In this document: positions 1 to 47,300 of the stretch, piece by piece
How the letters are laid out: each line of letters opens with the position of its first letter
How positions within the stretch are numbered: position 1 is the first letter of the stretch
Source: Caecitellus pseudoparvulus
Taxonomy: Eukaryota > Protista > Bigyra: Bicosoecida
Length of the DNA stretch: 64,000 nucleotides
Reading direction: 5' to 3'
Assembly: GCA_965644315.1 (NCBI GenBank)
Contig: CBFFRQ010000057.1
Location: 310,001-374,000, forward strand
The notes under the pieces: model-generated
The model's input: the letters and a program-made list of their open reading frames with translations, nothing else
What the model was told of the DNA's origin: nothing
The model's database searches: none
Position numbers and translations under genes: made by a program

Positions 1-225
1 GGGGGGGCCGGCGCAAATGTCTCTACAACGACGCCGTGCGAGCCGGCATCCGTTTACACAAATCCACCCTTCGGGGTGCTGTGTGACAGCGATCACTGCA
101 TTGTTGCTTCCTGGTGAGGAAGCAGAGACCAGCCGTCTGGTCTACACAACAGAGAAACAGCGAAAGAGACTTGCTTTGTGGAAGAGAAACGCCGCCCACG
201 CCTCCACCGCGAGCTTTACCTCTCA

Positions 226-3200
226 CTACAAAGCATCTGAAGCCACAACATAATCTGAGCAGGGTCCATCCTGCCCTCCCTCTCGCACTGCGGGTGCGAG
301 TCCCACCCCCTCCAGGTCATCTGAGCACGTGTCTGTCACGTCGATAGCGTTGCCATAGTAGCCTTCCTTGCCGGGCTTGTCCCCCGCAGCGATGCTGAAG
401 AGCCGAGCATCCACGTACCCCCACATGGCGAAGGCTTGGCACTTGGCCTCGTACTGCAGCAGAGCTTCGCACACAACCCCAGCGCCGTCATCGTCCAGCA
501 CAATTTCCTTCTTCGAGAAGTACGCAGCAGGCTTGGTGATGGTGCAGCCCCCGTTAGCTCTGTCCAGACTCTGCACGCGGCCACGTCGGGCCTTGGGCAG
601 GCACGCACATGAGCCTGACCGCAGCAGGCCAGTGTGCAGCGGCACACGCAGCAAGCGGTCCGAAGTCTCTGGCCCCCACAGACCATCCTCTGCGATGCCT
701 TCAGTCACACCGCCACTTACTCGGTGAGAGTTGACCAGGCGCGGCAAGTCTGCGTTCCACCGGCGCTGGTATGCCAGCACTGTCAGGCGCCGCACATCCT
801 TCCAGCCCTTGGTGGCGGTCTGGCCACCGCAAGTGGGACCTCCTTTGTACCTGAGCACGCTCAGCCCGGCGTCAATGTACTCATGCGTGAGCGGGTGCTG
901 GGCAAGGTACTCGCTTTCTTCAGTGCTCCAGCCGCCAGGGGGAGGCTGAATCTGACCAGGTTCCACCAAAGTGCCTTCCAACACCCACCCGCTTCGCTGC
1001 AAAGCCCGGGCGTACCCCGCATCCAGCGTGGTGTTCAGGACCAGCATCGTCGTCCCAAAGGCCATAGACACTCTTCCAACAGAGTGGATACGTTCTTCCT
1101 TGGGTGTCTTTTTGCTGTCATCGACGGTGCCGCAGCTTTCATGGGCTGACAGCACGCTGTGCTCCAGCAGCGGCCGCCACATGTGCGTCACATTCATCAA
1201 GATCGGGTTCCAGTCTGCGTACATCTCGTCGGCGATGCTGACGGCGATGTTGCGGTCGGCCGCGGACATGTTCGCGACAGTGACATTCAGCTCAAATGCG
1301 CGCTCCTCCAGCGCTGCATCCTGCATGGCGTCCTTCACCAGTTGGCGGTAAGCAGACGTGGCATGCATGAGCGCCTGTGCGGCAGGTCGCTGCAGGAACG
1401 GTGCTTCGGCCGCGCGGCCGTGCAGGCCAACGCCAGAGGGTGGGTTGACTCGCGCCAGAGCTCCCTGGTCCAGACACAGCAAGTCGTCTGTGATGTGCGC
1501 GTTAAAGCGGGAAAGGGCAGGAACGTCACACGCGACATGTCGCAGGTCAGAGTCCTTGGGAGGCAAGCGCCAAGGCTCCGGCAAGCTGGCCCACTTGCCA
1601 CTGTACAGGTGTCTCACGGTCGGCTCCACAACCATGCTGATGGGGGGCTCCACAGGAACAGGTGCGGCATCTCCCAGAGGCTCCCACACGCCAGTAGTCG
1701 CATTGTACGCCTCCAGCTCGCCGTCAGGGCCAGGCAGCGCACCACTGGAAATGCTGCTCACATCAACGTCCTGCTTCTTGCAAGGGTTAGACGTCGGTCC
1801 ACATGCCTCTAGAGCAGTGTAGGTGAGGGGCGACCCATTCTCTTGCATGGTTCGTACACACTCCGCGTGTTCATGGGACTGATGAATGACTTGTTGCCCG
1901 GGACACGGCTGCGGCAGCTTCTTGACAAAGTTCTCGAGGAACCACATCGCAGCGCGAACCACTGCGGTATTGCAAGCCTGCTGTGTCTTCTGGTCCTCAA
2001 CAGCAACACTTGGCCAGAAGGCACAGTTGGCGCCGATGGGGAATCCATCTGCTGGAGTCGCAGCAAGAGCTTGCTGTGTCGGCCCGTCCATGCGGCCGGA
2101 CACGCGCAAGACAACAGAGGGGTCCTCCATGCCAACATTCGCATTCCACAGCATCTGGAAGGCTTTCAGCATCGTGTTGGATGGCAGGGCTGTAATGCCT
2201 GTCGCTGCGCCTCGCCCATCCACACCTGGCAGCACCCACACTTGCCAAGACATGGCTTCCCCATCCACTTTACTGGGGGCAAAGGGCTGCGCATGATTCA
2301 CTTCCCACTGGTAATCGTAGTCGCCCAGGGAAAGGGGCATGACGTCTGCCCACGTTTTCACCCTCTTCTTTGAGCCGTCACCCAGCGTGATGCGCACGCT
2401 TGCTCCGGAGGCTGTCAGCGGAGAATCACCAAGCACCACAGCAGCGCCTGACTCGAACATGGACAGGCCCGGGAGCTCAACAGCCGAGTTGTCGTTCCCT
2501 GTGCCGCCCTTGCCCTGCCAAGTGTACAAGAAGTGCTGCGTGATGGGGGTGCGCAGGCCTGCCGCAATGGTCAAGTTCGCACTGTACCCCACGGCAGCCC
2601 GTGTCAGCTCGACCTTGCGCCTGAGCGCCTGCAGCACTGCACGCTGCGCGTAAGGGACAACCTTTGCCTCCGATGTCAAACGAGCCAGGCCGCGATCCAC
2701 CAGCAGCTGCATGGAGTGGAAGGGGCCGCCCTCCTTGCACATGAATAGGGACAAGATTTGCAGGCTGACCTGACCACCGCATGTGGCTGGGTTCCGGGCA
2801 CACAGTTCCACCATCTGAGGTGGCAGCGGGTCCCGGGAAAAGCCACCACTGGTGCCTGGCGCAGGCGCCAACGCTTGTGGCGTTGTCGTGTCATCCTCCA
2901 CAGTGTTGGTGCGGGCAGCTGCGGAGCGCTTGAGCAAGTCATGAAGGCCAGTGCCCCACCGCCTGCTCCCTGCATACTGAAGGAAGGTGCTAGTGTTGCC
3001 AACTGGTGGCGGGAAGGGGCCAGCCAGTGGGGTGAATCCATGCAGTGTGGTGGCACCCGCCCGCCCGGCGTGAACATCCGGGTGCAAGATGGGAGCCACG
3101 ACACGCCCCTGCGTATCAATGGTGACACCCAACTTTGCAGGGGACAGGCTTTGCGGTGGTCCAGCAGATACCACCCCAGCGTTCCGGCACCTAGCCACAA

Positions 3201-6200
3201 GTGCGACGGCATCGGCAAACTGGGCTTGGGCTTGCTCAAGGAGTGAGGGCTCTTGGGGCACGGGGGGTGCTTTCAGCAGGAGATCCCCCAGGACTGGCGA
3301 AGTTACTCCAGAGCTGAGGACTTCCCCGGGAACCACTGGCGTGATAAGCTCGGCTGACCCAGGGGGAAGCTTGTACCAGGGAATGGGCGGCAGCGTGATG
3401 CTGACTTTGTACGGGGACAGGCGCTTGAACACTGGCACGTGGGGAACGCCGCCGACAGTCGAGCCCGCATCAGCTTCAGACTTGGAAGTGCGCACAGTCT
3501 CGGAGTGCGAGCACTGCCCAGCTTCCTTTATGACACCACCTTCGTCTCCATTGGCTGTGGCCACTGAGGGCTTAAATACACGGGCGACCTTCTTGTCCCC
3601 ACATTCATCATCCAGAGCCTGTGTTTCGCTCTGCGCTCGTCGAGCACGCACGACATGCTGCTCATCATACCAGAAAGCAGGGCGCTGGAAGACTTGCGCT
3701 GCTTCACGCTCGACTAAGTCAGCCTCGGCAGGCTCCGCCAGAGAGCGACGGCTGGGAGCTGCGCCGGCCGCCTCGCGGTCAGCATAGGCCAGAGAGGCTG
3801 GGTCCATCGGGGGTCCACTGCTTAGAGCCCCAGCGGTTGAGTCGGTGTGGACTGTCCAGTAGGCTGGTGCAGGTGGCCCAAACATGGCCAGGGTGGGGTC
3901 AAATGCGGTTGGGAGGCTTGCCATGTTCGCCAAAGGATGGCTTCCATCGACGACTTCTCCCACAGGTGTCCAGAAGAGGATGCACTCCGCATGGCGCCGC
4001 TGAATCAACGCCGAGGAAACGTGGATCTCAGCAGGCGTGCTTGATGGGGTGGCACCAGCGACTGCGACTGTGGTCGTGGAGATGCTGGCACTGGGCAGGC
4101 CTGAGTACGCGGCTGCCTCTCGTCGCATGAGTGAGCAGACTTCATCGTACCGCCCCTGCACAAGGGCAGATCGTAGGTCAGACATGCGCCGCTCTGCTAA
4201 CGTGCTGCAGTCTGTGGAAAGCACGAAAGACACCAGCGCGGAGAACTGGTTTGCGTTCAGCGCCACTCCATGGGGAAGGTGCGTGCGCACACAACGCTCG
4301 GCGTCTTGCACGTCAGCGCGCAGGAAAGCTCGCGCCCTGTCCATCGAAATGGGGGAGGCTCCCAAGATGGACGCAGCCTCAGCCACAGTGCCAGCGCCTT
4401 CCACAACGTGCCCGAAGCCCACAGATACCACACCAGGCGGATCATACGCACCATGGTAAGGCACCAGGCGGCTTTGCACTGTAGAGCCGCCAGCGTCACC
4501 ACCTTCGAAGTGCTCCAGCAATGCCATGCCAACTGGGGTGGTGGACAGTAAGCTTAAGGTCGTTGTCGCAGCGTGGCCACCTGGCGAGCACCTGTCTCCT
4601 CGTCCACCGCAGTGATCAGCCGTGGAGATGGGCTTCAGTGGCCGCGTGACGCCGCCACCATGCGACAAGAAAGCCTCTTGTTCGTGGGGTGTGTATGACG
4701 GTCCACGAGAGCACTGAGCTCCTGTGGAGCAGGTGCGTGTTTCCACCAGCGCGGGACAAGGGCCACCGACCGCTGTTGTACTGCTTGAGCCGGGTGGAGA
4801 GGAGGTGACCAGTCGTGAACGCGAGCTGATCCCAGTACCACAGCTCACGCTACAGACAGACCATTCAGACCAACCGCCGACAGTGCATGTCGATAGGGCG
4901 CGCGCCAGCGCGCGCGCATGGGGCGATTGCTCTCGCTGAACAGGAGATGGGTGTAGCTTCTCTGCTTCTCGCATGGCAACAACAGCGTTTGCCGTGTGAA
5001 TGCCAATAGCTGGCCCCGCTGAAAAGACTTCCGCATCGCTTTCCAGGCGCAAGGCTCGGCTGGGCCGCTCTTCAAGGATCGCGACGAGCTCAGACTCAGC
5101 CGCTGCTGCACCGTGCTCGGTGATGACAAGGTGCGTGCCATCCTCGTGCTCAAAGAGTGCCGTGGATGGTCCCTCCAGCTGCAGCAGGCGCCTTGCAGAG
5201 CACTTGGAGTTTGTGAAGGCTGGGTCAACGAGACCATTCGGCAGGCCGGGGTAGCTCCACCATGAGTTCGTGTCTGTTCGAGGGTCAGCCTTAGGCACTG
5301 CACTTGTGAAGCCCCTAAAGGTCTTGGACGGGTCATACGTCGCTGTCGGCACTGCTGGCTCGTAGAAGCTGGGCAGGGGCGGGTCCTCCCCTGGAGGTGT
5401 CCAAAACAGGACGCATTCCATGTGCCTGCGCTGAACGGCTGCTTCATCCCAGCACCCTGGCGATGCAGGGCTGCCTTGAATGAACGTGCGCAGACGCGGG
5501 CAGAATCCGGACCAGTTCTCACCATTCATGCCAGCATTGGCAGAGTCTACAGAGGTCCAGGCAGCAGGGCCAACATCGTAGGCAAACACTACAAGCGCAG
5601 AAAACTGATTGACAGTCAGCGCAACACCTTCCCACGCTTCTGCCACCTTGCCAGCGAGAGTCTCAACTTCAATGCGCAGCCCTGCTTCCGTCTGTGACTC
5701 GGTCCAGGAGCAGTAAGATGCAGGGCTGCCGCCGGAGCACTTTGTAAGCTCAGTCTGGGCAGCAACAACAGAGGAGAACTCGCGCAAGGGGGTGCTGTAA
5801 CCATTGGTGAGCAGCCATGGCCGCGCTGTTCGGTGGGTACCTGCGGCAGATGTGTGGGCCCACGACTGACGAATGAGCTCCATAGCCGCAGGCGTGACAG
5901 TTGTGGTCGTGTGGTCCTTGGAAGCTTGGCCAGCAGACACAGGGAAAGGACCACAGGCAAATCCGCGACCGCCACACCAATCGCTAAAGGCTGAAGTGGG
6001 GCTGAAGCGCACCGCACCTCCCGGCCCGTGCACTAAGGTGTTGGCCGGCCAAGATGCTGGGATGGTCGTGGGGGGTGAGGGTCCAGGCACAAAAGGCCCA
6101 CCCACATACTGCACACCACGGTCCAAGCCTCGAATGTCCTTACCACTACCCTGTGCACCATTCAGGGGCATGTCTTCAGCATACAGGGCGTTGGTCGCCG

Positions 6201-9200
6201 AAAGGAAGGTTTCCATTTCCTCCACTGCTGCCACATACAGCAGGGGCACTACGGCTGTGTCCCAGACCGGTGCGCGAGAGACCTCCCGTACCCAGGTCAT
6301 GAGCAGATCCCGAGGAATGCCACCTGTGGCCGCAATAGTCTTGCGCTGTTCTGAGGGCCCGGATGCCAGGAAAGCTTGAAGTCCTGCTGGCAACTCGGCC
6401 ACTTGCTTTGGGGAGAGAGCTTTGAGGCGCTCACGGGCCTGCTCCAGGATACTTCCGACCGGTTCTTCCCACTCAGACTCACCTTCGCCGTCTTGTGGGA
6501 TATCGGGAGGGCGAGTGATGTTCTGATAAGCTGTGGCATTCAGGGTTGCGTTCGGGAGGAACATATCAATGTTCAGCGTGTGCCCTGAGTACTTGTTTCC
6601 CACGTAATTCCAGTCCCCCACCTCTTTGACTGGGTCAGACGGGGACCCCAAGAGCACATCAATCCCCTGCAGCGTGGGGTGAGGTCGTGTGCGGAGCCAC
6701 TCGAAGTTCTTCACAGACTTCTCATTCAGGTACTTCGCAGCATGAGTGTAGTTGGAAGCAAGCCCTCGCACCAACGCTGCACGCATGAAAGGGTTGCTGA
6801 CAACGTCGTCAGCGAACGTGTCACACGAGGACTCAAAGGTGATGGAGACACCTCCACGCTGCAGGGCTGCTGCGGAGGGCAGCACCTGCCCACTTTGGGG
6901 GACCAGGTCTGACGTGACCTTCATAGGCCATGACGTGAGCGGCGTGACCGATACCTTGTGCATGCCGCCCTCAGCCGAGGCTTCTTCGATGGTAGCAGTG
7001 TACGTCGCAGAGTACTCCTTCACGCCCAAGGGAAGGTCCTTGATATCATCATATACTAAGCGGTTCTCTAAGTCAGTTGGCCTCAAGGCTTGCCCTTCCC
7101 ACATGAGGGCTGTGTCCGCACCAGTCTTCGCAGAGTGCACTCGTGCAGAGATGATCTCTTTGGACACGCCAAGGTTAGGATCTGGCGCGCCGCCTACTTT
7201 CGTCACGCCATCCACGAGCGGCCCTGAGACCGGGAACAAGGCCTGCAGGGCGCCTGATAGCACCGGGAATGAATCTGCGCTAGGATTGCCTGCCTTGAAG
7301 GCAGCTGCGCCAGCTCGGTACGTTCGCTGCAGCTCCATCCAATACACATTCAGCTTGTCGATGGGCTGGCGACCAGCTATGGCCGTAGAGTTCGCATCCC
7401 CGCTAGCTTGAGCCGTGGCTTGTGTACCGGGGGTGATTTGGTCGCCTCCTGCCACTCGCAAAGCTTCAGGCAAGACGGGGTTTGTGTCGTTGCTACCGGC
7501 AGGCACGACAGTGACTGTGGAGGCTGCGGTGCCACTGACGGAGTCCAGGTTGTTGGCAGGATCATCCTCCATTGTGGGCAGTGGGAAGAGCTGTGTGCTG
7601 GCCCGCGTGCTGATGCGCAGCATGATGTTTGGGTCACCAGCATACAGCCCCCGCACAGGGTTTGTCTTGATGCACACTCCGCGCGACCACGTGGGGAGTC
7701 GCCCAGAATAGAAGGCATACGATTGAGAGGGCAGGTACGTGCGAGCACAGTGGGAGTCACCAATCGCTTGCAGTGTGGCCCATTTGAGGGTCATATCAGC
7801 AACAAAGAGGGAGCGGTCCTCCACCCGTGTGCGTGGCGCTTCAGTGCTGCTGTATCCTGGGGGGGGAACTCCCGAGCCATCGTCACCAAGAGGGTTGCCT
7901 GCAACCCCTCCGTCTGTAGTGCCTGCAGGTGCAGGGTCGGCATCTTCAGCAGCTTTGCTCGCACCCTCTGCGCTCAATGCATGGAAGGAAAGCAGCGCCA
8001 TTGTGGGAGCCAAGCTCCTGCCCTCGTGACGAGTGCGGATGGCACTCTTCGACTGCGTCAGGGCACAAGACTGCACAGCTGAGCCATCATCGGTAGGCTC
8101 CTCCACCGTCTTTGCAGCAGTGGGGGGAACGCGTGCAGGCTTGCATGCTGACATGGCGTCAGTAGCTGGAGTTTCTACAGGCAGGTATTTGCTGCGCAGG
8201 AATGCAATGTCCGCACTATCTGTCTTGGTGGAGAACTCGGACGGCAACCGCCACAAAGGCGTGTATGCGTATGATGCAAATAAGCGTGGGTGAACTTCAG
8301 CTGCAGCCATGCCTGCAGCGTAGGGTTTGCCCACCATCTCTTGCGCGGGTGCTGTTGGGATGTAGGCCGCTGCGATACCACCGGCTGTAATGACTCGGGG
8401 AGACAGGGGGGCGTCGAAGAACAGGGCGCTGTCCAAGGGCATGGAGAAGCGCTGCAGTACACCAGGCTTGACCGAAGCTATGGGGTAGACAGTGATGGTG
8501 GAGTATGTCATCCACCTGCCAACAGCCTCTACCTCGAGGAAGATGAAGCGCAGGCGCTGTGCTTCCCCTGGCTCGCCGTCTTCCACGGGCTCTGTTGCCG
8601 CGCTGGTGTCGGAAAGGCCTCGCACCTTACCATTGCCCACTGCGTCCTTAGGATCTGCAGAGAGACCAGCGGCGTACAGCTCAACGTATTGCCCCTCTGG
8701 GCCAAGCCCTCGACCAGCGTGAGGTGCAAAGCCTTCTTCTTCAGCAACTTCAACCTTGCTGTTGGCCGCAACAGTCACCTCCGCATGTTTACGGAGTTTC
8801 CCATCCAGGACCTTTACACGAGTCTGCGCCGCAGATGCGGGGGCCTTATTCACGGTTCTTCCATCCAGTCGCTGCTTGCACAGCTCAGCCCAGACATCGT
8901 TGTCGATGACTTCGGATGACCCAGTCAGCCCTGCCCGCGCAGCTCGCAGGTCTGCCACGAGCTGCCCAGTGTCCTTACCACCCCCTTGGTACTTTGGATC
9001 GCTCCAAGTTCCAGATGGTGTGAACTGCACTGGTCTCAGGCCCAAGGCGTCTACAAGCAGCTCCTGCGCAAGCCACAAGTCATCGCTGGGCGGTGAGGAG
9101 CTGGACAGCTGTGGCTTGGTGTCGCACACGCCAATCGGCAAGTGTGTGGCGTGAACGACAATGCGCTTGGCATCCACGGGGATGGGCACTGCGAAGTAGC

Positions 9201-12200
9201 GGCGGCGCCCTCGAACGGCAGTGACTCGCTGGGGCCGCCCGGCGTGCATGGGCAGCACCTCGCTAACTGTGACGGAGCCACGGAAGTCCTCGCCTACTTT
9301 GTTCTTTCGTGAAGGGTCTGGGAGGAGATAGGCGCCAAAGTACCCGTCAAAGTTGACGTCGCGGCATCTTTGAGCCCATGGAGTGGGTACGCCCGCAGGT
9401 GACGCCTCCTCATCCACCATGGTCTCATCCAAGCAAGGGACCCACATGCGATCGGAACCTGACATGGTGATTTGGGCAGTGTGCTTGCGACCTGGAACAG
9501 GCACAGTGTGGGGCTCATTCCAACGCATGCTCTGCTTCTTCTTCTTGCCAGACACAAAGGAGTCCATGTTCGCAACGGCTGAGCTGAAGGCAGTGGTCAG
9601 GGGAGTGTTGGAGTAGTATACGTCCAGGTCTCCCCTCACCTCAGAAGTGGTCACAAAGAGCCCGATGGCTCGGTCAGAAATCACTGGCTGCAACAATGCG
9701 TGAGTCTTGCTGTTGTCCATGCAGCGCTGCTTGGCAGTGACAGTGATGGGCTTGTTCAGCAGCATGCCCCGCACAAGGTTCATGCCCACTGCGGCTTGGC
9801 ACAACTCAACGTTGGGCGTGATGAAAGTCAAGAGGTTCCACTTGCCACCACCTGGTGCGTGGAAACTGTGTCCTTCCATGCACACGGTCATCGCCGACAC
9901 TGACCCACTTCGGGCAGCTTTCACAACATCGTTGACGCTAGACACGTGCACGAGCCGCCGGGAGGCAGCTTCGGAGTTCCACGACGCAGGGGCCAGGCTG
10001 CGGTGCGAAGTCCACTCGGAAGTGGCAAGGTTGTGGGAACTGGTGTCGTCGAAAGGCTCCAGCGACAGGTACAGGTTTACTTTGCCAATTACCTGCTTCG
10101 TGCTGGAAGTCTGGTCCCACACCGTCGTGTGCGACGTGACGTAGAAGCGCAACGTATCGTCGGGAATGTCCAGCTTGTACAACGTCCTTCCACCGGCAGC
10201 ATGATCTGCAGGGGAACCTGGCAGAGCACCACCAGTGGCAGTCTTGATAGTGGACCCGGCTCCGATGGGCATGGTGGCAACGTGCACTAACCCTGGCTCC
10301 AGCTTGCGCAGAGGTGAGAAGAGGGTGCTGAGGGTTGCAAAGGTGGAGGGGTCATTGATGCTTCCAGGAGATGCCAGCGTCTTGACTCGTGTAACCATGG
10401 CTGTTTTTGAGCTTTGCTGCCAGTACTCGCAAGTGCTGTCTTGCCCTTTGTGCCCCTCAGCGCTGGGCCCAGTCTTTGAGCACGACAGGGGCACAGTTCG
10501 AATGAAGGAGTGGTACATGTCCTCACCTGCTTTCCGCAAGGTGTTGGCGATCCACAGCTCATGTCGCATGACGCCACACCGATCATACACTGGCAGCCGC
10601 GCGTACTTCTTTGGCGAAGGGACTGCATCAATGTACTCCTTCCCATTTTCAGTCTTGCGGTTGGCTGCAGTAGCAGCAAAGGGGCCGCTCTTGTGCCAAG
10701 AATGGCGCGCCGAGGCACGCTGTGACAGGTCCGTCTCGAACACAGTCTGCCCGTCGTTGTTCTTGTTGGCCCACTGTGGATCCGTCCAGTAGCTGAACTT
10801 CAAGCTGGAATCGTACCGCGCGGGGACTTTGTCGAATGACTCCACTCGGTGCGTGACAACTCCCAGTTCGTTCTTGAGGGGCGGGTGCAACCAGCCGCTG
10901 GAGCCGGGCACTGGGATGGGACCCAGGCATTGCCAAGCGACGGTTCGAGGGTACATCAGCCACCAAGCCTTGCTGTATGATAGCTTGTCACCTATGCCAG
11001 TGGACTTGAGCTTCTTTTGGAACCATTTGTTTTTCTTGATGAGGTCCAGCAGCTTGCCGATGGCCCCGTTTCGTTCGCCACTGTCATCCTTCGCAGTGGT
11101 TTTCTGGGTGACCTTCACCTTGGCTAGGCCTGGGTTGTCTCGCTTCCAATTCACGTAGTCTCCTCTAAGCTTCTCCACCATGGCACAGTCTTCTTCAGAC
11201 CCCTTGCACTTCGTCGACTGCAGGTTTCGCTTGACACGAGTCAGCAGGCCGTCGTGCTTGGACACAGCAAGGGCAGCATGGGCGGCAGACAGCTGCCTTG
11301 CAGTTGAAAAGGGATCTTGGAGTGCCTCCTCACTGGCATCCCGCAGCTCAACAAGGGTCTGTCCCAGTGCTCGGCCATGCGCCGTTACAATAGTGTTCGA
11401 GGCATTCAGCACGAGTGGAGCATGCTGATTTACCGCATAGTCTCTCTGGTGCCGGACGTGCTCCAGACGCAGGCGGTGAAGCGTGCGAGCGGAAGACACG
11501 GAGCCGACCAGCTCAATAGCAACAAGGTGATCCCCGTCATGTAGTGTGTGAAGACCTGCGTCTCCGTTGCCTGCCAGCTCATGCAACTGACGAGCCAGGC
11601 CAGACATGTCGTTGAGGGAGTCCTCAAATTCCCTGTCACCAGCTTCCAAGACCCGGATAGACACACGAGGGTCTGGCACGCGCCCCCCCAGAGCTGTTCC
11701 GTATGCTGCTTGCAGGGTGTCAGCAGTGCGCTGCGCTTGATCTCGAGGCATACCCCCAGCATGTGCAGAATACACGGCTGCTTGCGCGTGGCCGGAACGG
11801 GACTGGCCTGTGACGGGCAAGGAGACGTCGCGCACAAGTACAGGCTCTTGCCTACCAGCTGCGATGTCCCGGAGCTGGCGATGGAGAACTGCATGCCGAA
11901 GGCTATCTGCTGAAATGAATCGGTGAGAAATCTTCCGCCTCGTGGCTTTAGGAGCTTCCCAAGGGAGCACCTCACCAGGCACGGCATCCACCTCCACTCC
12001 ATCAGCATCAAGAACACGGATATTCTCTCGCTCTAGAGGGACAAGCACGGGTGTCTCATCGGACAGTCGACGAGGTGCCACCCTGTGCCACAGCGCACCT
12101 TGGCCAGGAGCGTGGCTTGGGGCCAGCCCTCGGCCGCGCTCTTGCAGCAAGCCAGGCTGGGACAGCTCCAAGCCGAGAGGACCAGGAAGCATGCCTCGAA

Positions 12201-14289
12201 GCGCGCCTGGTGGGAGGCTCTCTGCCCATGCTTCGGCCTGAGCAAACGGCGTGGAATCAGAACCAGACAAGTCACTTTGCCAGGCTGTCGCGTTGTCTGC
12301 CAGGCTTGTGTGGGCAAGTAGGCGCTTTCGTTGGTTTGACAGCACGAGGCCATCGTACCCGACGGGGTGGGAGTACACAGACACGCTGGGTGGCTTCTCG
12401 CCCAGATAGTTGCTGGCTGTAAGCGGCGAGAACTCTTTGTCAAACAGCTCCACCATCTTCTCCCGCATAATTTTCAGAGGATCCTCATCTTTTATGTCCA
12501 CCCGCACATCCAACGCAATCTGGAAGGACAAGTCAGCAGTCAGCAGCAGCTCCAGAGGATCCTTGTGCCGCAGCAACGTTGGCCGGCTGCACTTGTTGGT
12601 GGGGTCTGGCAGGGTGCCCGTGACGAGGAACTGGCCACACATCATGACAGTGATGGGCAGGACGAAGTACACGCGCATTTCGCCGTAGAAGCACACCTCG
12701 GGCTTCATCCACAGCGTGACACGCATGTCATCCGCCACAACTTTTTCTTTCTTTCCTACAGGCTGATCCACATCAAAGGTCTTCGCTCCAGCCCACTTCT
12801 CTCCATCTTCAATGTACCGGAACCCAGCCTCATGGCGCTTGGCATTTTGATAGGTCCGGGTGGCAAAGAAGCCGTTGATGCGCAGACCCAGCTCCATGCC
12901 CACGCGCATGCCGAACGCCGCGTTTACGTGAACAGGCACCTTGCCCACCATGACCCACTTGCCCCCTTCCCCGAACAGCAAGCGGTGGAAAAGGTTCCAG
13001 TCTTTGCGCCATCTCATGGGGTGCTCCCACAGATCTATTTTGAAGCGGATGCTGTAGCCGTATTCGAAGTGAGCCATGAACGACAGTTCCATGAGCTTTG
13101 GACAAAAATTCTCCCAATCCAACCTGTTGCACTTGGTCGCCTTCACGTTCAGCTTGAAGTCATACCCGGAAAACGCATACGCGTAGCAGTTCTCGCACTT
13201 AATGGCGCCCATGACAGCCTTTGTCACGTCGCACAGCTTGCTATCCGCGCCTTTGTCCCAGCACGTGCCCACCTTCCACCCACGCTTCTTCATGGCAGCG
13301 ATGGTGCCCGGAAAATTGTCTTTCACATTCCTGTTCAAGTCTGCCGCCATGTCGTCGAGTGTGACCTCTTCCTTCAATATCTTTCGATCTTCAAAGTCCC
13401 AGTTCCACCCGATTCGAGCAAATCCGTAGGGGTCTTTGACTTCGACCTTGCATCGGTCGTCGTCCAGATACGAATCAAGTGAGCAGTCGATGTTGCGCAC
13501 TTGGGTGCTCTCCAGCAGGCGTGCATGCACCAAGTCTGGACCAGCCTCACTACTCCAAGCCTTGACGTCTTCCGCGTCTGCATCCCACAGCTGCCGCCGG
13601 TGTTGTGGCAGCGGGTGCTCGACTCCCATGGCCTCCTTGGCTGGGCTGATGCCAGGGAACGCTGGGATGGCATTAGGGGAGGCCCTGAAAGCAGCTTCGT
13701 CTGGCGTCTCGGGGTCTTTCTCAGCTGCAGCCCGAAGGCCTCGTGCCATGGCTTCTGGAGCAGATGATCCATGGTGCAGAGCGTGTCCGGTCCGGTGCTT
13801 GATGGACACTTCCGCAGAGTGGAACATCTCCCACAGCTGCAAGTCTTGAGTCTCCACGAGGAGTGTGGAGAATGCAGGTGCAGTGGTGATGCGCGTCACA
13901 GCCTTCACGCGGCGGTAGATGGGCGTGGGCTCCGATGCAGTGGGGTCGGTGTGGCAGCGCCAGACAGCAGAGCCAGACAGGATGGGGTTTCCAGCCGTGA
14001 CGGTGAGATGGTGCTGCAACGCCGCATCGGCACCATCCTCAGTGGCCACGCGAAGCAAGAGGAAATCCTCCTCACACTCAACGTCCAGAAGGTGAGTGAG
14101 CTCGTCCATGTTCAACATGCCAGCATGGTGCTGCACGGAGTACTTGATGTCATGCAAGCTGCCACCTTGCCGTGTGCGCGAAAGCCCCGTGGCGTGGCTG
14201 GGGACAGAGGGGATCTGGAACGCTGAAATCCCCCCTACACCCAAACACAACACCACTAGAGCAATCACACGGGCGATGAGCACCGCCAT
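226..14289 (-). CDS. Gene A: giant secreted multidomain protein (~4687 aa) with DUF7029/DUF7223-like N-terminal beta domains, PPC-like middle region, GH24 lysozyme-like x2, TSP1, and M15-peptidase/PG-binding-like x2
   Basis: Uninterrupted 14.4-kb ORF (226..14628). The in-frame ATG at 14289 begins a clear signal peptide (MAVLIARVIALVVLCLGVGGISA-F), while the upstream 113 codons look non-coding. No C-terminal TM segment. Domain motifs are listed as separate features. Confidence 0.88.
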   Translation of the reverse strand: MAVLIARVIALVVLCLGVGGISAFQIPSVPSHATGLSRTRQGGSLHDIKYSVQHHAGMLNMDELTHLLDVECEEDFLLLRVATEDGADAALQHHLTVTAGNPILSGSAVWRCHTDPTASEPTPIYRRVKAVTRITTAPAFSTLLVETQDLQLWEMFHSAEVSIKHRTGHALHHGSSAPEAMARGLRAAAEKDPETPDEAAFRASPNAIPAFPGISPAKEAMGVEHPLPQHRRQLWDADAEDVKAWSSEAGPDLVHARLLESTQVRNIDCSLDSYLDDDRCKVEVKDPYGFARIGWNWDFEDRKILKEEVTLDDMAADLNRNVKDNFPGTIAAMKKRGWKVGTCWDKGADSKLCDVTKAVMGAIKCENCYAYAFSGYDFKLNVKATKCNRLDWENFCPKLMELSFMAHFEYGYSIRFKIDLWEHPMRWRKDWNLFHRLLFGEGGKWVMVGKVPVHVNAAFGMRVGMELGLRINGFFATRTYQNAKRHEAGFRYIEDGEKWAGAKTFDVDQPVGKKEKVVADDMRVTLWMKPEVCFYGEMRVYFVLPITVMMCGQFLVTGTLPDPTNKCSRPTLLRHKDPLELLLTADLSFQIALDVRVDIKDEDPLKIMREKMVELFDKEFSPLTASNYLGEKPPSVSVYSHPVGYDGLVLSNQRKRLLAHTSLADNATAWQSDLSGSDSTPFAQAEAWAESLPPGALRGMLPGPLGLELSQPGLLQERGRGLAPSHAPGQGALWHRVAPRRLSDETPVLVPLERENIRVLDADGVEVDAVPGEVLPWEAPKATRRKISHRFISADSLRHAVLHRQLRDIAAGRQEPVLVRDVSLPVTGQSRSGHAQAAVYSAHAGGMPRDQAQRTADTLQAAYGTALGGRVPDPRVSIRVLEAGDREFEDSLNDMSGLARQLHELAGNGDAGLHTLHDGDHLVAIELVGSVSSARTLHRLRLEHVRHQRDYAVNQHAPLVLNASNTIVTAHGRALGQTLVELRDASEEALQDPFSTARQLSAAHAALAVSKHDGLLTRVKRNLQSTKCKGSEEDCAMVEKLRGDYVNWKRDNPGLAKVKVTQKTTAKDDSGERNGAIGKLLDLIKKNKWFQKKLKSTGIGDKLSYSKAWWLMYPRTVAWQCLGPIPVPGSSGWLHPPLKNELGVVTHRVESFDKVPARYDSSLKFSYWTDPQWANKNNDGQTVFETDLSQRASARHSWHKSGPFAATAANRKTENGKEYIDAVPSPKKYARLPVYDRCGVMRHELWIANTLRKAGEDMYHSFIRTVPLSCSKTGPSAEGHKGQDSTCEYWQQSSKTAMVTRVKTLASPGSINDPSTFATLSTLFSPLRKLEPGLVHVATMPIGAGSTIKTATGGALPGSPADHAAGGRTLYKLDIPDDTLRFYVTSHTTVWDQTSSTKQVIGKVNLYLSLEPFDDTSSHNLATSEWTSHRSLAPASWNSEAASRRLVHVSSVNDVVKAARSGSVSAMTVCMEGHSFHAPGGGKWNLLTFITPNVELCQAAVGMNLVRGMLLNKPITVTAKQRCMDNSKTHALLQPVISDRAIGLFVTTSEVRGDLDVYYSNTPLTTAFSSAVANMDSFVSGKKKKQSMRWNEPHTVPVPGRKHTAQITMSGSDRMWVPCLDETMVDEEASPAGVPTPWAQRCRDVNFDGYFGAYLLPDPSRKNKVGEDFRGSVTVSEVLPMHAGRPQRVTAVRGRRRYFAVPIPVDAKRIVVHATHLPIGVCDTKPQLSSSSPPSDDLWLAQELLVDALGLRPVQFTPSGTWSDPKYQGGGKDTGQLVADLRAARAGLTGSSEVIDNDVWAELCKQRLDGRTVNKAPASAAQTRVKVLDGKLRKHAEVTVAANSKVEVAEEEGFAPHAGRGLGPEGQYVELYAAGLSADPKDAVGNGKVRGLSDTSAATEPVEDGEPGEAQRLRFIFLEVEAVGRWMTYSTITVYPIASVKPGVLQRFSMPLDSALFFDAPLSPRVITAGGIAAAYIPTAPAQEMVGKPYAAGMAAAEVHPRLFASYAYTPLWRLPSEFSTKTDSADIAFLRSKYLPVETPATDAMSACKPARVPPTAAKTVEEPTDDGSAVQSCALTQSKSAIRTRHEGRSLAPTMALLSFHALSAEGASKAAEDADPAPAGTTDGGVAGNPLGDDGSGVPPPGYSSTEAPRTRVEDRSLFVADMTLKWATLQAIGDSHCARTYLPSQSYAFYSGRLPTWSRGVCIKTNPVRGLYAGDPNIMLRISTRASTQLFPLPTMEDDPANNLDSVSGTAASTVTVVPAGSNDTNPVLPEALRVAGGDQITPGTQATAQASGDANSTAIAGRQPIDKLNVYWMELQRTYRAGAAAFKAGNPSADSFPVLSGALQALFPVSGPLVDGVTKVGGAPDPNLGVSKEIISARVHSAKTGADTALMWEGQALRPTDLENRLVYDDIKDLPLGVKEYSATYTATIEEASAEGGMHKVSVTPLTSWPMKVTSDLVPQSGQVLPSAAALQRGGVSITFESSCDTFADDVVSNPFMRAALVRGLASNYTHAAKYLNEKSVKNFEWLRTRPHPTLQGIDVLLGSPSDPVKEVGDWNYVGNKYSGHTLNIDMFLPNATLNATAYQNITRPPDIPQDGEGESEWEEPVGSILEQARERLKALSPKQVAELPAGLQAFLASGPSEQRKTIAATGGIPRDLLMTWVREVSRAPVWDTAVVPLLYVAAVEEMETFLSATNALYAEDMPLNGAQGSGKDIRGLDRGVQYVGGPFVPGPSPPTTIPASWPANTLVHGPGGAVRFSPTSAFSDWCGGRGFACGPFPVSAGQASKDHTTTTVTPAAMELIRQSWAHTSAAGTHRTARPWLLTNGYSTPLREFSSVVAAQTELTKCSGGSPASYCSWTESQTEAGLRIEVETLAGKVAEAWEGVALTVNQFSALVVFAYDVGPAAWTSVDSANAGMNGENWSGFCPRLRTFIQGSPASPGCWDEAAVQRRHMECVLFWTPPGEDPPLPSFYEPAVPTATYDPSKTFRGFTSAVPKADPRTDTNSWWSYPGLPNGLVDPAFTNSKCSARRLLQLEGPSTALFEHEDGTHLVITEHGAAAAESELVAILEERPSRALRLESDAEVFSAGPAIGIHTANAVVAMREAEKLHPSPVQREQSPHARALARALSTCTVGGWSEWSVCSVSCGTGISSRSRLVTSSPPGSSSTTAVGGPCPALVETRTCSTGAQCSRGPSYTPHEQEAFLSHGGGVTRPLKPISTADHCGGRGDRCSPGGHAATTTLSLLSTTPVGMALLEHFEGGDAGGSTVQSRLVPYHGAYDPPGVVSVGFGHVVEGAGTVAEAASILGASPISMDRARAFLRADVQDAERCVRTHLPHGVALNANQFSALVSFVLSTDCSTLAERRMSDLRSALVQGRYDEVCSLMRREAAAYSGLPSASISTTTVAVAGATPSSTPAEIHVSSALIQRRHAECILFWTPVGEVVDGSHPLANMASLPTAFDPTLAMFGPPAPAYWTVHTDSTAGALSSGPPMDPASLAYADREAAGAAPSRRSLAEPAEADLVEREAAQVFQRPAFWYDEQHVVRARRAQSETQALDDECGDKKVARVFKPSVATANGDEGGVIKEAGQCSHSETVRTSKSEADAGSTVGGVPHVPVFKRLSPYKVSITLPPIPWYKLPPGSAELITPVVPGEVLSSGVTSPVLGDLLLKAPPVPQEPSLLEQAQAQFADAVALVARCRNAGVVSAGPPQSLSPAKLGVTIDTQGRVVAPILHPDVHAGRAGATTLHGFTPLAGPFPPPVGNTSTFLQYAGSRRWGTGLHDLLKRSAAARTNTVEDDTTTPQALAPAPGTSGGFSRDPLPPQMVELCARNPATCGGQVSLQILSLFMCKEGGPFHSMQLLVDRGLARLTSEAKVVPYAQRAVLQALRRKVELTRAAVGYSANLTIAAGLRTPITQHFLYTWQGKGGTGNDNSAVELPGLSMFESGAAVVLGDSPLTASGASVRITLGDGSKKRVKTWADVMPLSLGDYDYQWEVNHAQPFAPSKVDGEAMSWQVWVLPGVDGRGAATGITALPSNTMLKAFQMLWNANVGMEDPSVVLRVSGRMDGPTQQALAATPADGFPIGANCAFWPSVAVEDQKTQQACNTAVVRAAMWFLENFVKKLPQPCPGQQVIHQSHEHAECVRTMQENGSPLTYTALEACGPTSNPCKKQDVDVSSISSGALPGPDGELEAYNATTGVWEPLGDAAPVPVEPPISMVVEPTVRHLYSGKWASLPEPWRLPPKDSDLRHVACDVPALSRFNAHITDDLLCLDQGALARVNPPSGVGLHGRAAEAPFLQRPAAQALMHATSAYRQLVKDAMQDAALEERAFELNVTVANMSAADRNIAVSIADEMYADWNPILMNVTHMWRPLLEHSVLSAHESCGTVDDSKKTPKEERIHSVGRVSMAFGTTMLVLNTTLDAGYARALQRSGWVLEGTLVEPGQIQPPPGGWSTEESEYLAQHPLTHEYIDAGLSVLRYKGGPTCGGQTATKGWKDVRRLTVLAYQRRWNADLPRLVNSHRVSGGVTEGIAEDGLWGPETSDRLLRVPLHTGLLRSGSCACLPKARRGRVQSLDRANGGCTITKPAAYFSKKEIVLDDDGAGVVCEALLQYEAKCQAFAMWGYVDARLFSIAAGDKPGKEGYYGNAIDVTDTCSDDLEGVGLAPAVREGGQDGPCSDYVVASDAL
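630..1535 (-). other. Gene A: degenerate M15 (D-Ala-D-Ala peptidase-like) module plus peptidoglycan-binding-like tail, copy 2
   Basis: CDVPALSRFNAHI...APFLQRPAAQAL...MNVTHMWRPLLEH...KDVRRLTVLAYQRRWNAD...GIAEDGLWGPETSDRL. This follows the recalled cyanobacterial/myxobacterial M15+PGBD pattern (PFLQxxAxxAL..INSAYRT..LAFQxLWN..IxEDGxYGPxTExRL). The SxHxxGxAxD zinc motif is not recognisable. Confidence 0.62.
2022..2805 (-). other. Gene A: M15 peptidase-like module plus peptidoglycan-binding-like tail, copy 1 (zinc ligands substituted)
   Basis: VVPYAQRAVLQAL...LTIAAGLRTPITQHFLY...LPGLSMFESGAAVVL...LKAFQMLWNAN..DP...RVSGRMDGPTQQALAATPADGFPIG. The M15 consensus R-T-x-x-x-Q-x-x-L-Y and PG-x-S-x-H-x-x-G-x-A-x-D are present, with H->F and D->V. 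Confidence 0.7.
3965..4545 (-). other. Gene A: GH24 (phage-type) lysozyme-like domain, copy 2, possibly active
   Basis: GMALLEHFEG...AYDPPGVVSVGFGH...ISMDRARAFLRADVQDAERCV...LNANQFSALVSF...ALIQRRHAECILF matches GH24 motifs (LIxxFEG; YxDxxGxxTIGYGH; LNQNQFDALVSF; GLxxRRxxExxLF). Catalytic Glu and Asp retained, Thr->Ser. Confidence 0.85.
4711..4887 (-). other. Gene A: thrombospondin type-1 (TSP1, spondin-type) repeat
   Basis: CTVGGWSEWSVCSVSCGTGISSRSR...GGPCPALVETRTC: canonical WxxWxxCSxxCG..RxR..C pattern. Confidence 0.92.
5395..5900 (-). other. Gene A: degenerate GH24 lysozyme-like domain, copy 1
   Basis: AMELIRQSW...LTNGY...VALTVNQFSALVVFAYDVG...AVQRRHMECVLFWTP. The C-lobe motifs are conserved and paralogous to copy 2, but the FEG catalytic Glu is absent. 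Confidence 0.75.
12490..14155 (-). other. Gene A: N-terminal DUF7029-like domain followed by a DUF7223-like beta-rich domain
   Basis: MLNMDELTHLLDVECEEDFLLL...ILSGSAVWRC...IYRRVKAV...LLVETQDLQLWEMFHSAEVSI, then IKCENCYAY...VMVGKVPVHVN. Resembles the recalled tandem domain pair of fungal/protist secreted proteins. Confidence 0.45.
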
Positions 14290-14795
14290 GATGCGCCTTG
14301 CTCCCTCGCTCGTCAAAGGACAAGCGGCGTTGTCGCTGCGGCCAGCTGCGAGCTGAGCACACGAGCCCTGGCTCACTTGCCGGCAGCGCTCTAAAGAGCG
14401 GCGTGGTGGACAGGAATAGGCAGCAGGGTAACGGTCTGTGTGCCCGTTTGTGCTGATTTGCTTCAGTGCGGCTTCTGTACGAAGCGCATTGGGGACGGTG
14501 CTGCGGGAGCTGCGGAAAGCCAGCCAAGGCGAGCTTGTGGCGAGGAGCTTCTGGCGTGGTGCAAGCGAAACAGTGCATTGGGAAGCGGGAGCACGAGCGT
14601 GCTCTCTGAGCCCAAAAGATGACAGCATTCACATGCTGAACAGTAAACACAACAGACACACTCAAAGATGGAAGGGCAAGCTGCACAGTGCAGCCTGCCT
14701 CTGGTGCGGAGAGAGGGGGGCAAGCAAAACTGAAGCCACGCGCATTCACACCGGTGGAAGTAGAGAAGCCAGGCTCAAGGAAGCGCTTAACTCCT

Positions 14796-44352: not shown

Positions 44353-47300
44353 TTAGTCCGCCGGCTGCGTGTGCAAAATGGCAGGGCAGTGCGGCACGGT
44401 GAGCACTGGGTCTGCTGCTGCCCGAGCCGCATTGAAAGGCCTGGCGTCTTGCTGCGCGCCAACAAGGCGGACAGGCGGCGCCTGCGAGGCGGGCAGTGCC
44501 GCCCCAGTGCAGTCTACACCCTGGATGGATGCGTAAAGATGCTGGGAGACAAGAGGCGTTGCCGACAGTTCTTGAGAAGAAGCGGTGGCGGCCTCTGCCG
44601 CAGCAGTGGCAGCAGCATCCACGCCTCCAGACACTCCGTGGATAGCCAGGTTCACCAAGGTGCCAACTGCTGTGGGTGGCAAGACGTCTGACGCTCCTGG
44701 TGCTGTGCCCACTTGGACAGTGTACATGATCGGGCAGGTCGGCGGCGGCGCGGGCTGGGCTTCCCAGGCCAGCAGCAGGGTGCCACGCAAGGCCGGCGTG
44801 AATCCAGTGCCACTGCCGCCCACCCGCTCCACGTTTGCCCATACACACGGGGCCGCAGGCGCTTTCATGGCGCTGCCTGCTTGTGGGATGGTGCCGGCCA
44901 GCAAGGAGGCAGCAGCTGCTTGCGCTGGCGAAACCGGCATCACCTGGCCTGCCAAGATGCTGGCCACTTGTTCCCGGGGTGTGTCTCGGCTGGCAAGCTG
45001 AGCATGCACAACAGGCACGTCCGTGTGGTACATGGCTGAGAGGGGCAGACGCAGCCTGGCAGGTGGGGGCATGGCTGCCCCAGCGACGAAAAGGCCCATG
45101 CTGTCCCCCTGTGCGGTTAAGAAGGCTGGGGCACGCCCAGCCCGAGCACCCACACTGCGGGCCTTGACGGTCGCTGAGTAGCTCTGCACCAGCAACGTCT
45201 CGCTCCCAGCTGGAACAGTGGTCACGACCTCCCCAGTTGCCAGCCCAAGCGCCAGTACAAGGCTGTACGAAGATGTGGGCGTCGGGGTTGCGAGATTCGT
45301 GGCTGATCCATCTGAAGCAATGTCGATGGCACCTGAGGCTGCACATTGCATCCAGACACCGGAGCTCGTCACAGTGGCGTTGGGCAGCCGCCCTTGGCAG
45401 CGCTCGGCCGGCGCGGCGCTGGCGCTGGCCCACCAAGGCAGTGGGGCACCAGAGCTTGTGAGGCGGGAGGTCGCCTCCGAATTCACCGTGGCCCACTGGG
45501 CAGGTGCCCACGCAGCTGGTCCACCTGCACCTCCGCCCACCAGGAGGCAAGCTACGGACACAACGCTGACCGGCCCAGCGGCCTGGTGCAGCGCTGCAGC
45601 CCGTGGCACGCGCAACAGGAAGGATGTCGATGCAGCAGGCTTAATGCTGCTGGCTGCAGTCAGTGCAGCCACGGCAGCACGGGGCTGTGCGGCCACGACC
45701 CGCGCTGCCATTGCGGCCAGCAAGCCCGAAGCGGGCACAGCGCCTACGAAGGCGGCTTCCAGAGCTTCCTGGTGGGCATTGTGTTGACGCACACCTTCAT
45801 GAAGCGCCCCACAGCTTTGAGGGCTGGAAGGGGAGAATGGTGCAGGAAGACCGGAGGCTGTGGCGGCCGAGAGGGGAGCCGCCCAAGCTGCAACGTCGGT
45901 GCGAGCGGCGGGTGTGAGAAGCACTTGCCGAGTGCTGCAAGACAGGGCGGTGGAACCGCTGGCAAGGTGCGTCCACGTCAAGCACATGAAGTACGGCACA
46001 CCCACGCTGGGCGCCGGCGCGAAGCCAGAGACTGGAACGTGGTGCACGGCGGCTCCGCCAGACAGCGCACTGTGCACATCGCTGGTAATGTTCAAGACGC
46101 CCGTGCCTAGGGCAGCAGCAGCATCCCCTGCTGTTGGGGTCAACCAGAGAGAGCTTGAAAATGCTGCCGGTGTGCTCAGGCTGTTCTCGAAGGATGGGTC
46201 AACTGTGACACTTGTCACTGGCAAATCGGCCATGCCAGAGCGGGGAGACTGCTGCAGGGGCAGCTTTGTCAGCGCGGCGGTCCAAAGTTCCACCTGCTCC
46301 TCGTCAAGGGCAAAGTGGGCAGGGCCCACACATACCCCAAGGGATGGCAAGGCACTGTGGGGCAGCCAAACAGGCAGCTGAGACGCAGCCGCTGCCAGCG
46401 CGCTTGGATGGCTTGCAGCCAGTCCCGTACAGGTAGCCTGAGTGGGAGACACCTCTTGTGAAGCCTGCGGGAGCGGTGGAGCGGAGGAGACAGGCAAAGG
46501 CGCCTGAGAAGTCGACACGCTGCCTTCAAGCAACGGCAAAGGGGGCGTGTAGGCGAGGGAGGAGTGCCCCGCCGCGTCCTGCACTTCGATGCCGAAACGC
46601 AGGGCGATGTGCACGTCCTCAGGCAACAGGCCAAGCGCCAGACCTGACTGCTCAGCCATGACCCGCAGGGTAGAGTCACGAGTGCGCTGCACCAACGAAT
46701 CCAAGAGAGCTGGTGCTACCTCGAATGCCAGGTTGGTCGTGCCAGCAAGAGCCGGTGGCTTGTGGCTCTGCGCAGGGTGGGTCCACCTGCCGGCGGAGGC
46801 GCTGACTCCTCCGTGGGAGACGCTTGGCGTGTCCACCAAGTCGAAAACGCCAAGGGCATGGTCAGCCCCCAGGGTTGAAGGGTCGCAGGTACACTGCGTC
46901 GGCCACACCCAACGAGGGGATGAAGTAGCCACACTGCGGCCGCCTTGCCGCTCGGCTCGCACAAGGGCATCAGCACACACGCACGCGCTGGCTGAAGCAA
47001 GCCAGGATGCCGCATCGGCCACGGCCACCGACACCGCAGCACGGCCACCGGCTAGCAGGCCGGCTGCACCTCCTGCAATCTGCACACCTGCAGCGAGCTG
47101 TGCAGTGCCAATCTCAGGCGCAGCTGTGTCCACCACCCCTGCTTGGCCCACGTGTGTGGCAGTGTTACCAGCACAATCAAAGGCTTTCATGGTGACGGAC
47201 AAGCGAGTGCCCTGCGGAAGCGCATCAAAAAGCGTCTTGGATGCGGCCTTCGCCCACAGTGCTGCGACACCAGCCGTTCCATTCACAGTTCCAAGACCGT

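What the first reader, a model, noticed from the sequence alone, without database searches (positions are those of the whole stretch)
630..5990. Eukaryotic giant secreted protein carrying a peptidoglycan-directed cassette (GH24 x2, TSP1, M15/PG-binding x2)
Seen: the C-terminal ~1800 aa of gene A contain two phage-type lysozyme domains around a TSP1 repeat, then two M15 peptidase + PG-binding-like modules. The gene has a signal peptide and lies among intron-containing eukaryotic genes. Known: GH24 cleaves the glycan backbone of peptidoglycan, M15 enzymes cut D-Ala-containing stem peptides, and both families are typically bacterial or phage. Inference: horizontally acquired wall-targeting domains have been assembled into one ~500-kDa protein for recognising, holding or digesting bacterial prey. 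I do not know of this architecture being described.
Basis: partly seen in the sequence, partly recalled or inferred. Interest (0 to 1): 0.88.

Follow-up and report, generated by a model that had tools for sequence, protein, structure and literature searches.

The report
Giant protist cell-wall protein, mostly disarmed
A marine single-celled eukaryote, probably a bacteria-eater, encodes a 500-kDa secreted protein made of bacterial-wall-cutting modules; three of its four enzyme sites are dead but conserved, while a 6,000-residue sister gene keeps six intact sites, which suggests a wall-binding and wall-digesting pair for handling prey.

Summary
The architecture is real. An intronless ORF (226-14628, minus; probable start 14289, 4687 aa, 504 kDa, signal peptide) carries GH24-TSP1-GH24 and two modules homologous to a Myxococcota M15 peptidase family with a PG-binding-like tail. 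Four independent sequencing runs tile it colinearly. Two corrections follow. (1) Both M15 modules have lost the zinc ligands and GH24-1 its catalytic Glu; only GH24-2 may be active. The dead domains are under purifying selection (dN/dS 0.06-0.11 against an 83%-identical duplicate). A colinear paralog on contig C29 (about 6000 aa, with a 53%-identical orthologue in another species) keeps two intact GH24, one M15B-like and three M15C sites. (2) Transfer into this lineage is not shown. The same M15 module occurs in Clydonella, Paulinella and Fabomonas and is fused to GH24 in other eukaryote-like genes; one eukaryotic clade is not rejected. Best reading: a secreted or phagosomal wall-binding scaffold with at most one muramidase, possibly cut at RxL sites, partnering the active paralog. 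PG binding, expression and processing are untested. I found no paper describing the family. Earlier scan notes saw the same dead sites on this stretch and on another piece.

The parts
226..14289 (-). Gene A: probable CDS, 4687 aa, 504 kDa, no intron, no transmembrane or C-terminal hydrophobic segment (open frame extends to 14628)
   Evidence: the C31 duplicate aligns from this Met
14221..14289 (-). Predicted signal peptide (aa 114-136 of the open frame)
   Evidence: the only hydrophobic window; read by eye, no SignalP run
12469..14181 (-). N-terminal beta-rich region shared with the C29 paralog; faint resemblance to fungal DUF7029/DUF7223
   Evidence: weak match to C29 exon 1 and aa 85-319; Atlas score 0.78, a lead only; no Pfam hit
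5395..5979 (-). GH24-1 with Cys-rich leader; pseudo-lysozyme (catalytic Glu replaced by W2923, Asp absent)
   Evidence: Pfam E 3.2e-7; alignment A1; dN/dS 0.06
4711..4887 (-). Thrombospondin type 1 repeat (absent from the C29 paralog)
   Evidence: no TSP1 among the C29 Pfam hits
3964..4614 (-). GH24-2; keeps E3375, D3396 and S3402 (Thr to Ser), with a 9-residue loop insert and a roughly 25-residue Ser/Thr insert; possibly active
   Evidence: Pfam E 3.8e-13
3199..3426 (-). Conserved beta-rich segment after the lysozyme pair, also in C29; may be half of a domain split by the cassette (not shown)
   Evidence: 43% to C29; Atlas blank for the N-terminal half
2239..2802 (-). M15-fold module 1, pseudo-peptidase: Arg4026 kept; Zn ligands His to F4058 and Asp to V4065; third ligand lost
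   Evidence: dN/dS 0.09
2023..2178 (-). PG-binding-like helical tail 1 (family-specific, not PG_binding_1 by Pfam)
   Evidence: profile E 7e-12; structural Z 2.9-3.9 to PGBD-containing chains; Pfam blank
829..1533 (-). M15-like module 2, more eroded (ligand positions M4522 and L4529 by alignment); dead in C29 and its orthologue too
   Evidence: dN/dS 0.11
604..810 (-). PG-binding-like helical tail 2
   Evidence: profile E 1e-8
5182..5193 (-). RxL motif after GH24-1 (aa 3146-3149); others at aa 2833, 3239 and 3628 flank the cassette; candidate processing sites

Best explanation
Gene A is the mostly non-catalytic member of a small family of giant secreted or phagosomal peptidoglycan-handling proteins in a marine protist, probably a bacterivorous bicosoecid. 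Shown: the domain order, loss of three of four active sites, purifying selection on the dead domains, and a colinear paralog (C29) with six intact wall-hydrolase sites. Inferred: the protein enters the secretory pathway and reaches the cell surface or food vacuole. The dead GH24 and dead M15 folds still bind glycan strands and stem peptides (module 1 keeps the substrate-binding Arg). TSP1 and the long beta-rich N-terminal part anchor or space the modules. GH24-2 nicks the glycan. RxL sites may release modules as separate chains. Net role: hold bacterial wall material and present it to the active enzymes of C29 and the small lysozymes.
For: Domains. Lost ligands. Purifying selection with dS about 0.7-1.6 in these domains: GH24-1 0.06, M15-1 0.09, M15-2 0.11, whole gene 0.11. 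Colinear paralog with intact GH24 x2, VanY-like x1 and Peptidase_M15_4 x3; orthologue P0001 53% identical over 6079 columns. All matches to this M15 profile and to Peptidase_M15_4 in the genome lie in these three giant genes. RxL: 41 observed vs 23.9 +/- 4.5 in shuffles, 0/200; RXL processing is proposed for diatom precursors (PMC4557024). Enzymatic and bactericidal roles of lysozymes are separable in Dictyostelium (PMC13399256).
Against: No binding, activity, localisation or expression data. The one RNA-labelled run holds 48-kb contigs and may be DNA. The tails do not reach PG_binding_1 significance. Purifying selection shows a function, not a PG-related one. About 2500 N-terminal residues are unexplained. 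RxL enrichment was tested against whole-protein shuffles only and is also seen in neighbour gene B. The organism was not identified by a tool.
Confidence: 0.5

Rival explanations
1. Gene A has left peptidoglycan biology. It is a structural surface, adhesion or cell-coat protein that reuses dead enzyme folds as spacers or protein-interaction modules (as Hedgehog reuses the M15/LAS fold), co-duplicated with the giant Ig/FN3-like genes B and C.
For: The groove positions now hold Phe and Val, and module 1 has an extra beta insert. TSP1 is an adhesion domain. A, B and C are duplicated as one block with different flanks. Hedgehog scores Z 8.4 against the model. Cafeteria upregulates giant adhesion-type genes in starvation (PMC7852580).
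Against: GH24-2 keeps Glu and Asp in both copies despite dS 1.5. All four wall-directed folds and both tails are retained together.
Confidence: 0.25
2. Gene A is an active digestive enzyme: both lysozymes and both M15 peptidases cut prey wall.
For: The folds are right and the domains are conserved.
Against: The His/Asp/His ligands, 100% conserved in outside homologues, are absent in both gene copies; GH24-1 lacks Glu. At most one site can work.
Confidence: 0.07
3. The family is defensive rather than nutritional: it senses or lyses bacteria that resist digestion or attach to the cell, with the dead modules acting as PGRP-like pattern receptors.
For: Non-catalytic PG-enzyme folds act as receptors in animals (PGRPs; own knowledge). 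The two gene A copies are deeply diverged (dS 0.9) beside a near-identical gene B (dS 0.15). Bivalve GH24 is antibacterial (PMC5303276).
Against: No signalling or membrane-spanning part. No sign of positive selection in any window.
Confidence: 0.15
4. Assembly chimera or bacterial contamination.
For: The closest named M15 homologues are Myxococcota.
Against: One open frame with flat GC; four runs tile it; two paralogs and an orthologue; the C29 gene has a GT-AG intron after its signal-peptide exon.
Confidence: 0.01

Closest known systems
Myxococcota M15 family metallopeptidase (VanY/LdcB-like, PF02557) with helical tail, often MYXO-CTERM anchored
   Same: Whole-module homology from the N-terminal Cys helix to the tail; TM 0.66; names from Polyangiaceae, Myxococcales, Chondromyces and Labilithrix
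   Different: The bacterial proteins are about 250-1000 aa with intact zinc sites; gene A has two dead copies in a 4687-aa chain. Cleavage specificity is untested even for the bacterial family; profile hits include Ply500/LysB4, VanXY and LdcB
Small protist M15 and M15-GH24 fusion proteins (Clydonella, Paulinella, Fabomonas; P0125; locus L218)
   Same: Same M15 module; the named ones are secreted-looking; two eukaryote-like genes join it to a GH24 lysozyme, one across GT-AG introns
   Different: About 250-800 aa with intact sites; no TSP1 hit; no giant scaffold. I found no paper on them either
Eukaryotic phage-type (GH24) lysozymes: bivalve BCPL (PMC5303276), fungal GH24 with SH3-like domain (PMC10394673), Entodinium GH24 (PMC6925433), Dictyostelium V-type (PMC13399256)
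   Same: GH24 muramidase co-opted by eukaryotes, with duplication and fusion to other domains
   Different: None that I found is described as a multi-thousand-residue chain combining muramidase and M15 peptidase modules with conserved dead copies
Modular phage endolysins and bacterial autolysins (muramidase + peptidase + PG-binding domain)
   Same: Same logic: glycan cutter, stem-peptide cutter and wall-binding module on one chain (own knowledge)
   Different: Typically far shorter; prokaryotic; no TSP1, RxL sites or Cys-rich stalk
RXL-processed diatom precursors (silaffin, silacidin, frustulin; PMC4557024)
   Same: Secreted precursors with RxL at module borders
   Different: Processing is not shown here and the cargo is unrelated

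Membership tests
GH24 phage-type lysozyme (PF00959) | Profile match over the curated cut-off | tested here: met
   31.2 and 50.3 bits vs 22.3; PDB endolysins E 1e-12 with the family profile
GH24 phage-type lysozyme (PF00959) | Catalytic Glu-Asp-Thr in domain 1 | tested here: not met
   Trp2923 at Glu, no Asp; same in the C31 copy
GH24 phage-type lysozyme (PF00959) | Catalytic Glu-Asp-Thr in domain 2 | tested here: inconclusive
   E3375, D3396 and S3402 present, but Glu-Asp spacing is 20 instead of 8 and there is a long insert near the C-terminus
GH24 phage-type lysozyme (PF00959) | Muramidase activity | not testable with these tools
   needs an assay
Peptidase M15 (LAS fold, VanY-like) | Fold and sequence homology | tested here: met
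   Module 1: profile E 3e-11, VIA Z 9.7 to VanX, Atlas TM 0.66. Module 2: profile only, flanking parts and alignment. Pfam VanY cut-off not reached
Peptidase M15 (LAS fold, VanY-like) | Zinc ligands H-x6-D plus a downstream His | tested here: not met
   F4058, V4065 and no third His in module 1; M4522 and L4529 in module 2. Met in C29 module 1 and P0001
PG_binding_1 (PF01471) | Profile match | tested here: not met
   No hit for either tail or for the C29 and P0001 tails; own profile E 0.025 at best
PG_binding_1 (PF01471) | Three-helix PGBD fold | tested here: inconclusive
   Model residues 212-265 match PGBD-containing chains at Z 2.9-3.6; some matches also use the N-terminal helix
Thrombospondin type 1 repeat (PF00090) | Profile match over cut-off | tested here: met
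   29.2 bits vs 21.6
Lineage-specific HGT from bacteria or phage | Supported nesting inside a bacterial or phage clade | tested here: inconclusive
   M15: unresolved; 13 eukaryote-context modules as one clade not rejected, p-AU 0.82. GH24: the family is one side of a branch next to two eukaryote-like sequences, SH-aLRT 93, 145 columns
RXL-processed polyprotein | RxL motifs enriched and at module borders | tested here: inconclusive
   Enriched (41 vs 24; basic-context 15 vs 6); 8 of 13 basic-context sites kept between C29 and P0001; cleavage not testable

The most novel reading that the evidence does not exclude
Bacterivorous flagellates encode a dedicated, undescribed peptidoglycan-processing system: giant secreted polyproteins. 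One member (C29) carries six intact wall hydrolases of three kinds and another (gene A) is a conserved pseudo-enzyme prey-binding partner. Both are cut at RxL sites and are built from an M15 family that is old and widespread in phagotrophic protists and shared with predatory myxobacteria.
Probability: 0.3. Interest if true: 0.82.

Novelty: new variant of a known kind. Interest (0 to 1): 0.62.

Why it matters
Heterotrophic nanoflagellates are major consumers of marine bacteria, yet how they catch prey and break its wall is barely known at gene level. The Cafeteria bacterivory transcriptome paper has no mention of lysozyme or peptidoglycan in its main text (PMC7852580). This family offers concrete, expressible modules to test and possible marker genes for grazing in metatranscriptomes. 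It also points to an M15 peptidase family shared by myxobacteria and at least four eukaryotic lineages, which I could not find described, and gives a clean case of selected pseudo-enzymes beside an active paralog.

Tried and rejected
A word-indexed homologue search with M15 module 1 alone found nothing; the link came through the intact C29 module. Folding the C29 module with a 4-row alignment failed (pLDDT 33). Foldseek gave no E<=0.001 match for module 1, though VanXY/LdcB ranked top. A possible third PG-binding domain at aa 1850-1920 was not supported for gene A (the C29 equivalent E 0.15). The split beta-sandwich idea found no uninterrupted copy in the genome and no Atlas hit, so it stays open. 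Positive selection between the two copies was looked for and not seen. Careful ML trees did not finish; quick trees are quoted. No GH25 was found in the genome (not proof of absence). Ten paper searches found no description of the architecture or of protist M15 peptidases; the library lacks most subscription papers. P0001 was too long for the look-up of encoding contigs.
Full report
Observation. The window holds three giant minus-strand ORFs: A 226-14628 (4800 codons), B 14796-43373 (9525) and C 44353-57615 (4420). GC is flat at about 0.60. In A, Pfam finds Phage_lysozyme twice and TSP_1 between them. The only hydrophobic segment follows the ATG at 14289, and the duplicate copy aligns from the same Met. 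The likely product is 4687 aa, 504 kDa, secreted, with no membrane anchor. Contigs from four runs of four studies overlap across 150-6100 at mostly 95-99% identity with no intron-type joint, so the region is neither chimeric nor spliced. The one RNA-labelled run also covers it but contains 48-kb contigs, so transcription is not shown.

Host. The assembly is 30.6 Mb in 215 contigs with tandem eukaryotic 18S genes of 1697 nt. The sequence occurs in marine metagenomes. Neighbouring genes are eukaryotic. I take the host for a Cafeteria-like bicosoecid stramenopile from genome size, 18S length and other scan notes on virophage and mastigoneme genes; this is inference and no tool confirmed it.

The M15 modules. 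Pfam barely sees them (VanY E 0.083) and a word-indexed search was blank. A genome search revealed two paralogs: C31:412898-427000 (83% identical) and C29:48302-66226 (5974 codons). The intact C29 module found 444 relatives over its whole length. Named ones are mostly Myxococcota M15 metallopeptidases, many with MYXO-CTERM. A profile from 149 of these, excluding the family itself, scores gene A module 1 at E 3e-11 and 7e-12 and module 2 at 3e-7 and 1e-8; the reversed protein gives 0.86. The AF2 model of module 1 (pLDDT 82; it leans on the same homologues) matches VanX Z 9.7, VanXYg 9.2, Hedgehog 8.4 and LdcB 8.2, and Myxococcota M15 clusters at TM 0.66. The helical tail is part of this family. 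It is only weakly like PG_binding_1: no Pfam hit, structural Z 2.9-3.9.

Active sites. The zinc ligands that are 100% conserved in the 71 outside homologues aligned are F4058 and V4065 in module 1, with no third His; Arg4026 is kept. Module 2 has Met and Leu at the ligand positions and is equally dead in C29 and its orthologue. GH24-1 has W2923 at the catalytic Glu, and its C29 counterpart is dead too. GH24-2 keeps E3375, D3396 and S3402 with inserts. So gene A has at most one working site. Against the C31 copy, dN/dS is 0.11 overall, 0.06 in GH24-1, 0.09 in M15-1 and 0.11 in M15-2, at dS of 0.7-1.6 (simple counting method, approximate near saturation). The dead folds are therefore maintained by selection.

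The family. C29 is colinear with A from the N-terminal region to module 2. It starts with a signal-peptide exon and a 198-nt GT-AG intron. It carries two intact GH24, an intact VanY-like module, three Peptidase_M15_4 domains and a long Cys-rich stalk, and lacks TSP1. P0001, from a metagenome contig, is a 5941-aa orthologue at 53% identity in which the first M15C site has been lost. All matches to these two M15 profiles in the genome lie in the three giant genes. Genes A, B and C are duplicated as a block between C57 and C31 with unrelated flanks.

Origin. The M15 module is not private to this lineage. It is in EukProt proteins of Clydonella, Paulinella and Fabomonas and in contigs beside ALIX/BRO1 or RCC1-HECT genes. 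P0125 fuses it to GH24 in 803 aa, and locus L218 appears to do so across GT-AG introns. Trees are poorly resolved. Holding 13 eukaryote-context modules together gave a likelihood 9.8 higher than the free search and p-AU 0.82; the group was chosen after seeing a first tree and long branches are involved, so this neither proves one origin nor supports a recent transfer. The ten family GH24 domains form one side of a branch next to two eukaryote-like sequences and not inside a named bacterial clade. Bacterial ancestry is likely, but date and donor are open.

Possible processing. RxL occurs 41 times in A against 23.9 +/- 4.5 in shuffles. Sites at aa 2833, 3146, 3239 and 3628 flank GH24-1 and the TSP1-GH24-2 unit, and 8 of 13 basic-context sites are kept between C29 and P0001. 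RXL is proposed as a cleavage signal in diatom precursors (PMC4557024). This is suggestive only; gene B is also enriched in basic-context sites.

Mechanism. Best reading (0.5): gene A is a secreted or phagosomal wall-binding scaffold. Its dead lysozyme and dead peptidase folds grip glycan and stem peptide, and its single possible muramidase nicks the wall, beside the fully armed C29 product. Rivals: a structural or adhesion protein that no longer binds PG (0.25), a defence receptor or effector (0.15), a fully active enzyme (0.07), an artefact (0.01). Domains, dead sites, selection and the paralog are shown; binding, location, expression and cleavage are inferred.

Comparison and novelty. Eukaryotic GH24 lysozymes are known in bivalves, fungi, ciliates and Dictyostelium (PMC5303276, PMC10394673, PMC6925433, PMC13399256), and endolysins use the same muramidase-peptidase-binder logic (own knowledge). 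Ten searches found no description of the giant architecture or of this protist M15 family; the library is incomplete. I class it as a new variant of a known kind. Interest 0.62. Other first-stage notes of this scan had already remarked on the dead sites and RxL motifs, on this stretch and on other pieces of the genome; I tested those claims here and do not count the notes as evidence.

Noticed in passing
G000:C29:48302-66841 (-), loci L016-L019: Paralog of about 6000 aa with three GH24 (two intact), an intact VanY-like module, three Peptidase_M15_4 domains and a Cys-rich stalk; deserves its own report as the active member.
   Followed up: partly
window 226-57615 vs G000:C31:412898-470058: Three giant genes duplicated as one block. 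Synonymous divergence is a patchwork: about 0.1-0.15 in most of B and the 3' half of C, above 1 in much of A and the 5' half of C. Gene conversion or old haplotypes; unexplained.
   Followed up: partly
window 14796-43373 (-): Gene B, 9525 aa: long helical N-terminal third, many Ig/FN3-like repeats by eye, a C-terminal transmembrane helix and basic tail; no significant Pfam hit.
   Followed up: no
window 44353-57615 (-): Gene C, 4420 aa: Cys-rich N-terminus then repeats like those of gene B; no Pfam hit.
   Followed up: no
L220:1216-2292 (+) (C24) and L219 (C32): Two small secreted-looking PG_binding_1 + YkuD L,D-transpeptidase-like genes, the C32 one apparently with an intron: more wall-directed genes in this genome.
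   Followed up: partly
G000:C40:330156-331781 (+), L029: Tandem pair of small Cys-rich GH24 lysozymes next to a serine carboxypeptidase; the cluster representative is labelled Symbiodinium sp. KB8, probably a contaminant in that assembly (my inference).
   Followed up: partly
P0009, P0054, P0072, P0125, L211, L213, L218: Myxococcota-type M15 module in Amoebozoa, Rhizaria, an ancyromonad and unnamed eukaryotes, sometimes fused to GH24 or PG_binding_1; apparently an undescribed protist family.
   Followed up: partly
window 8869-9081 (-), aa 1850-1920: Helical insert shared with C29 that looks like a degenerate PG-binding domain; not significant (C29 copy E 0.15).
   Followed up: yes
window 59596-61321 vs G000:C57:402262-403992: An 89%-identical inverted second copy of the choline-transporter-like gene region on the same contig.
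   Followed up: no
L030:205-9558 (-): A 3117-codon ORF with a C2 domain lies just downstream of gene A, outside the window.
   Followed up: no
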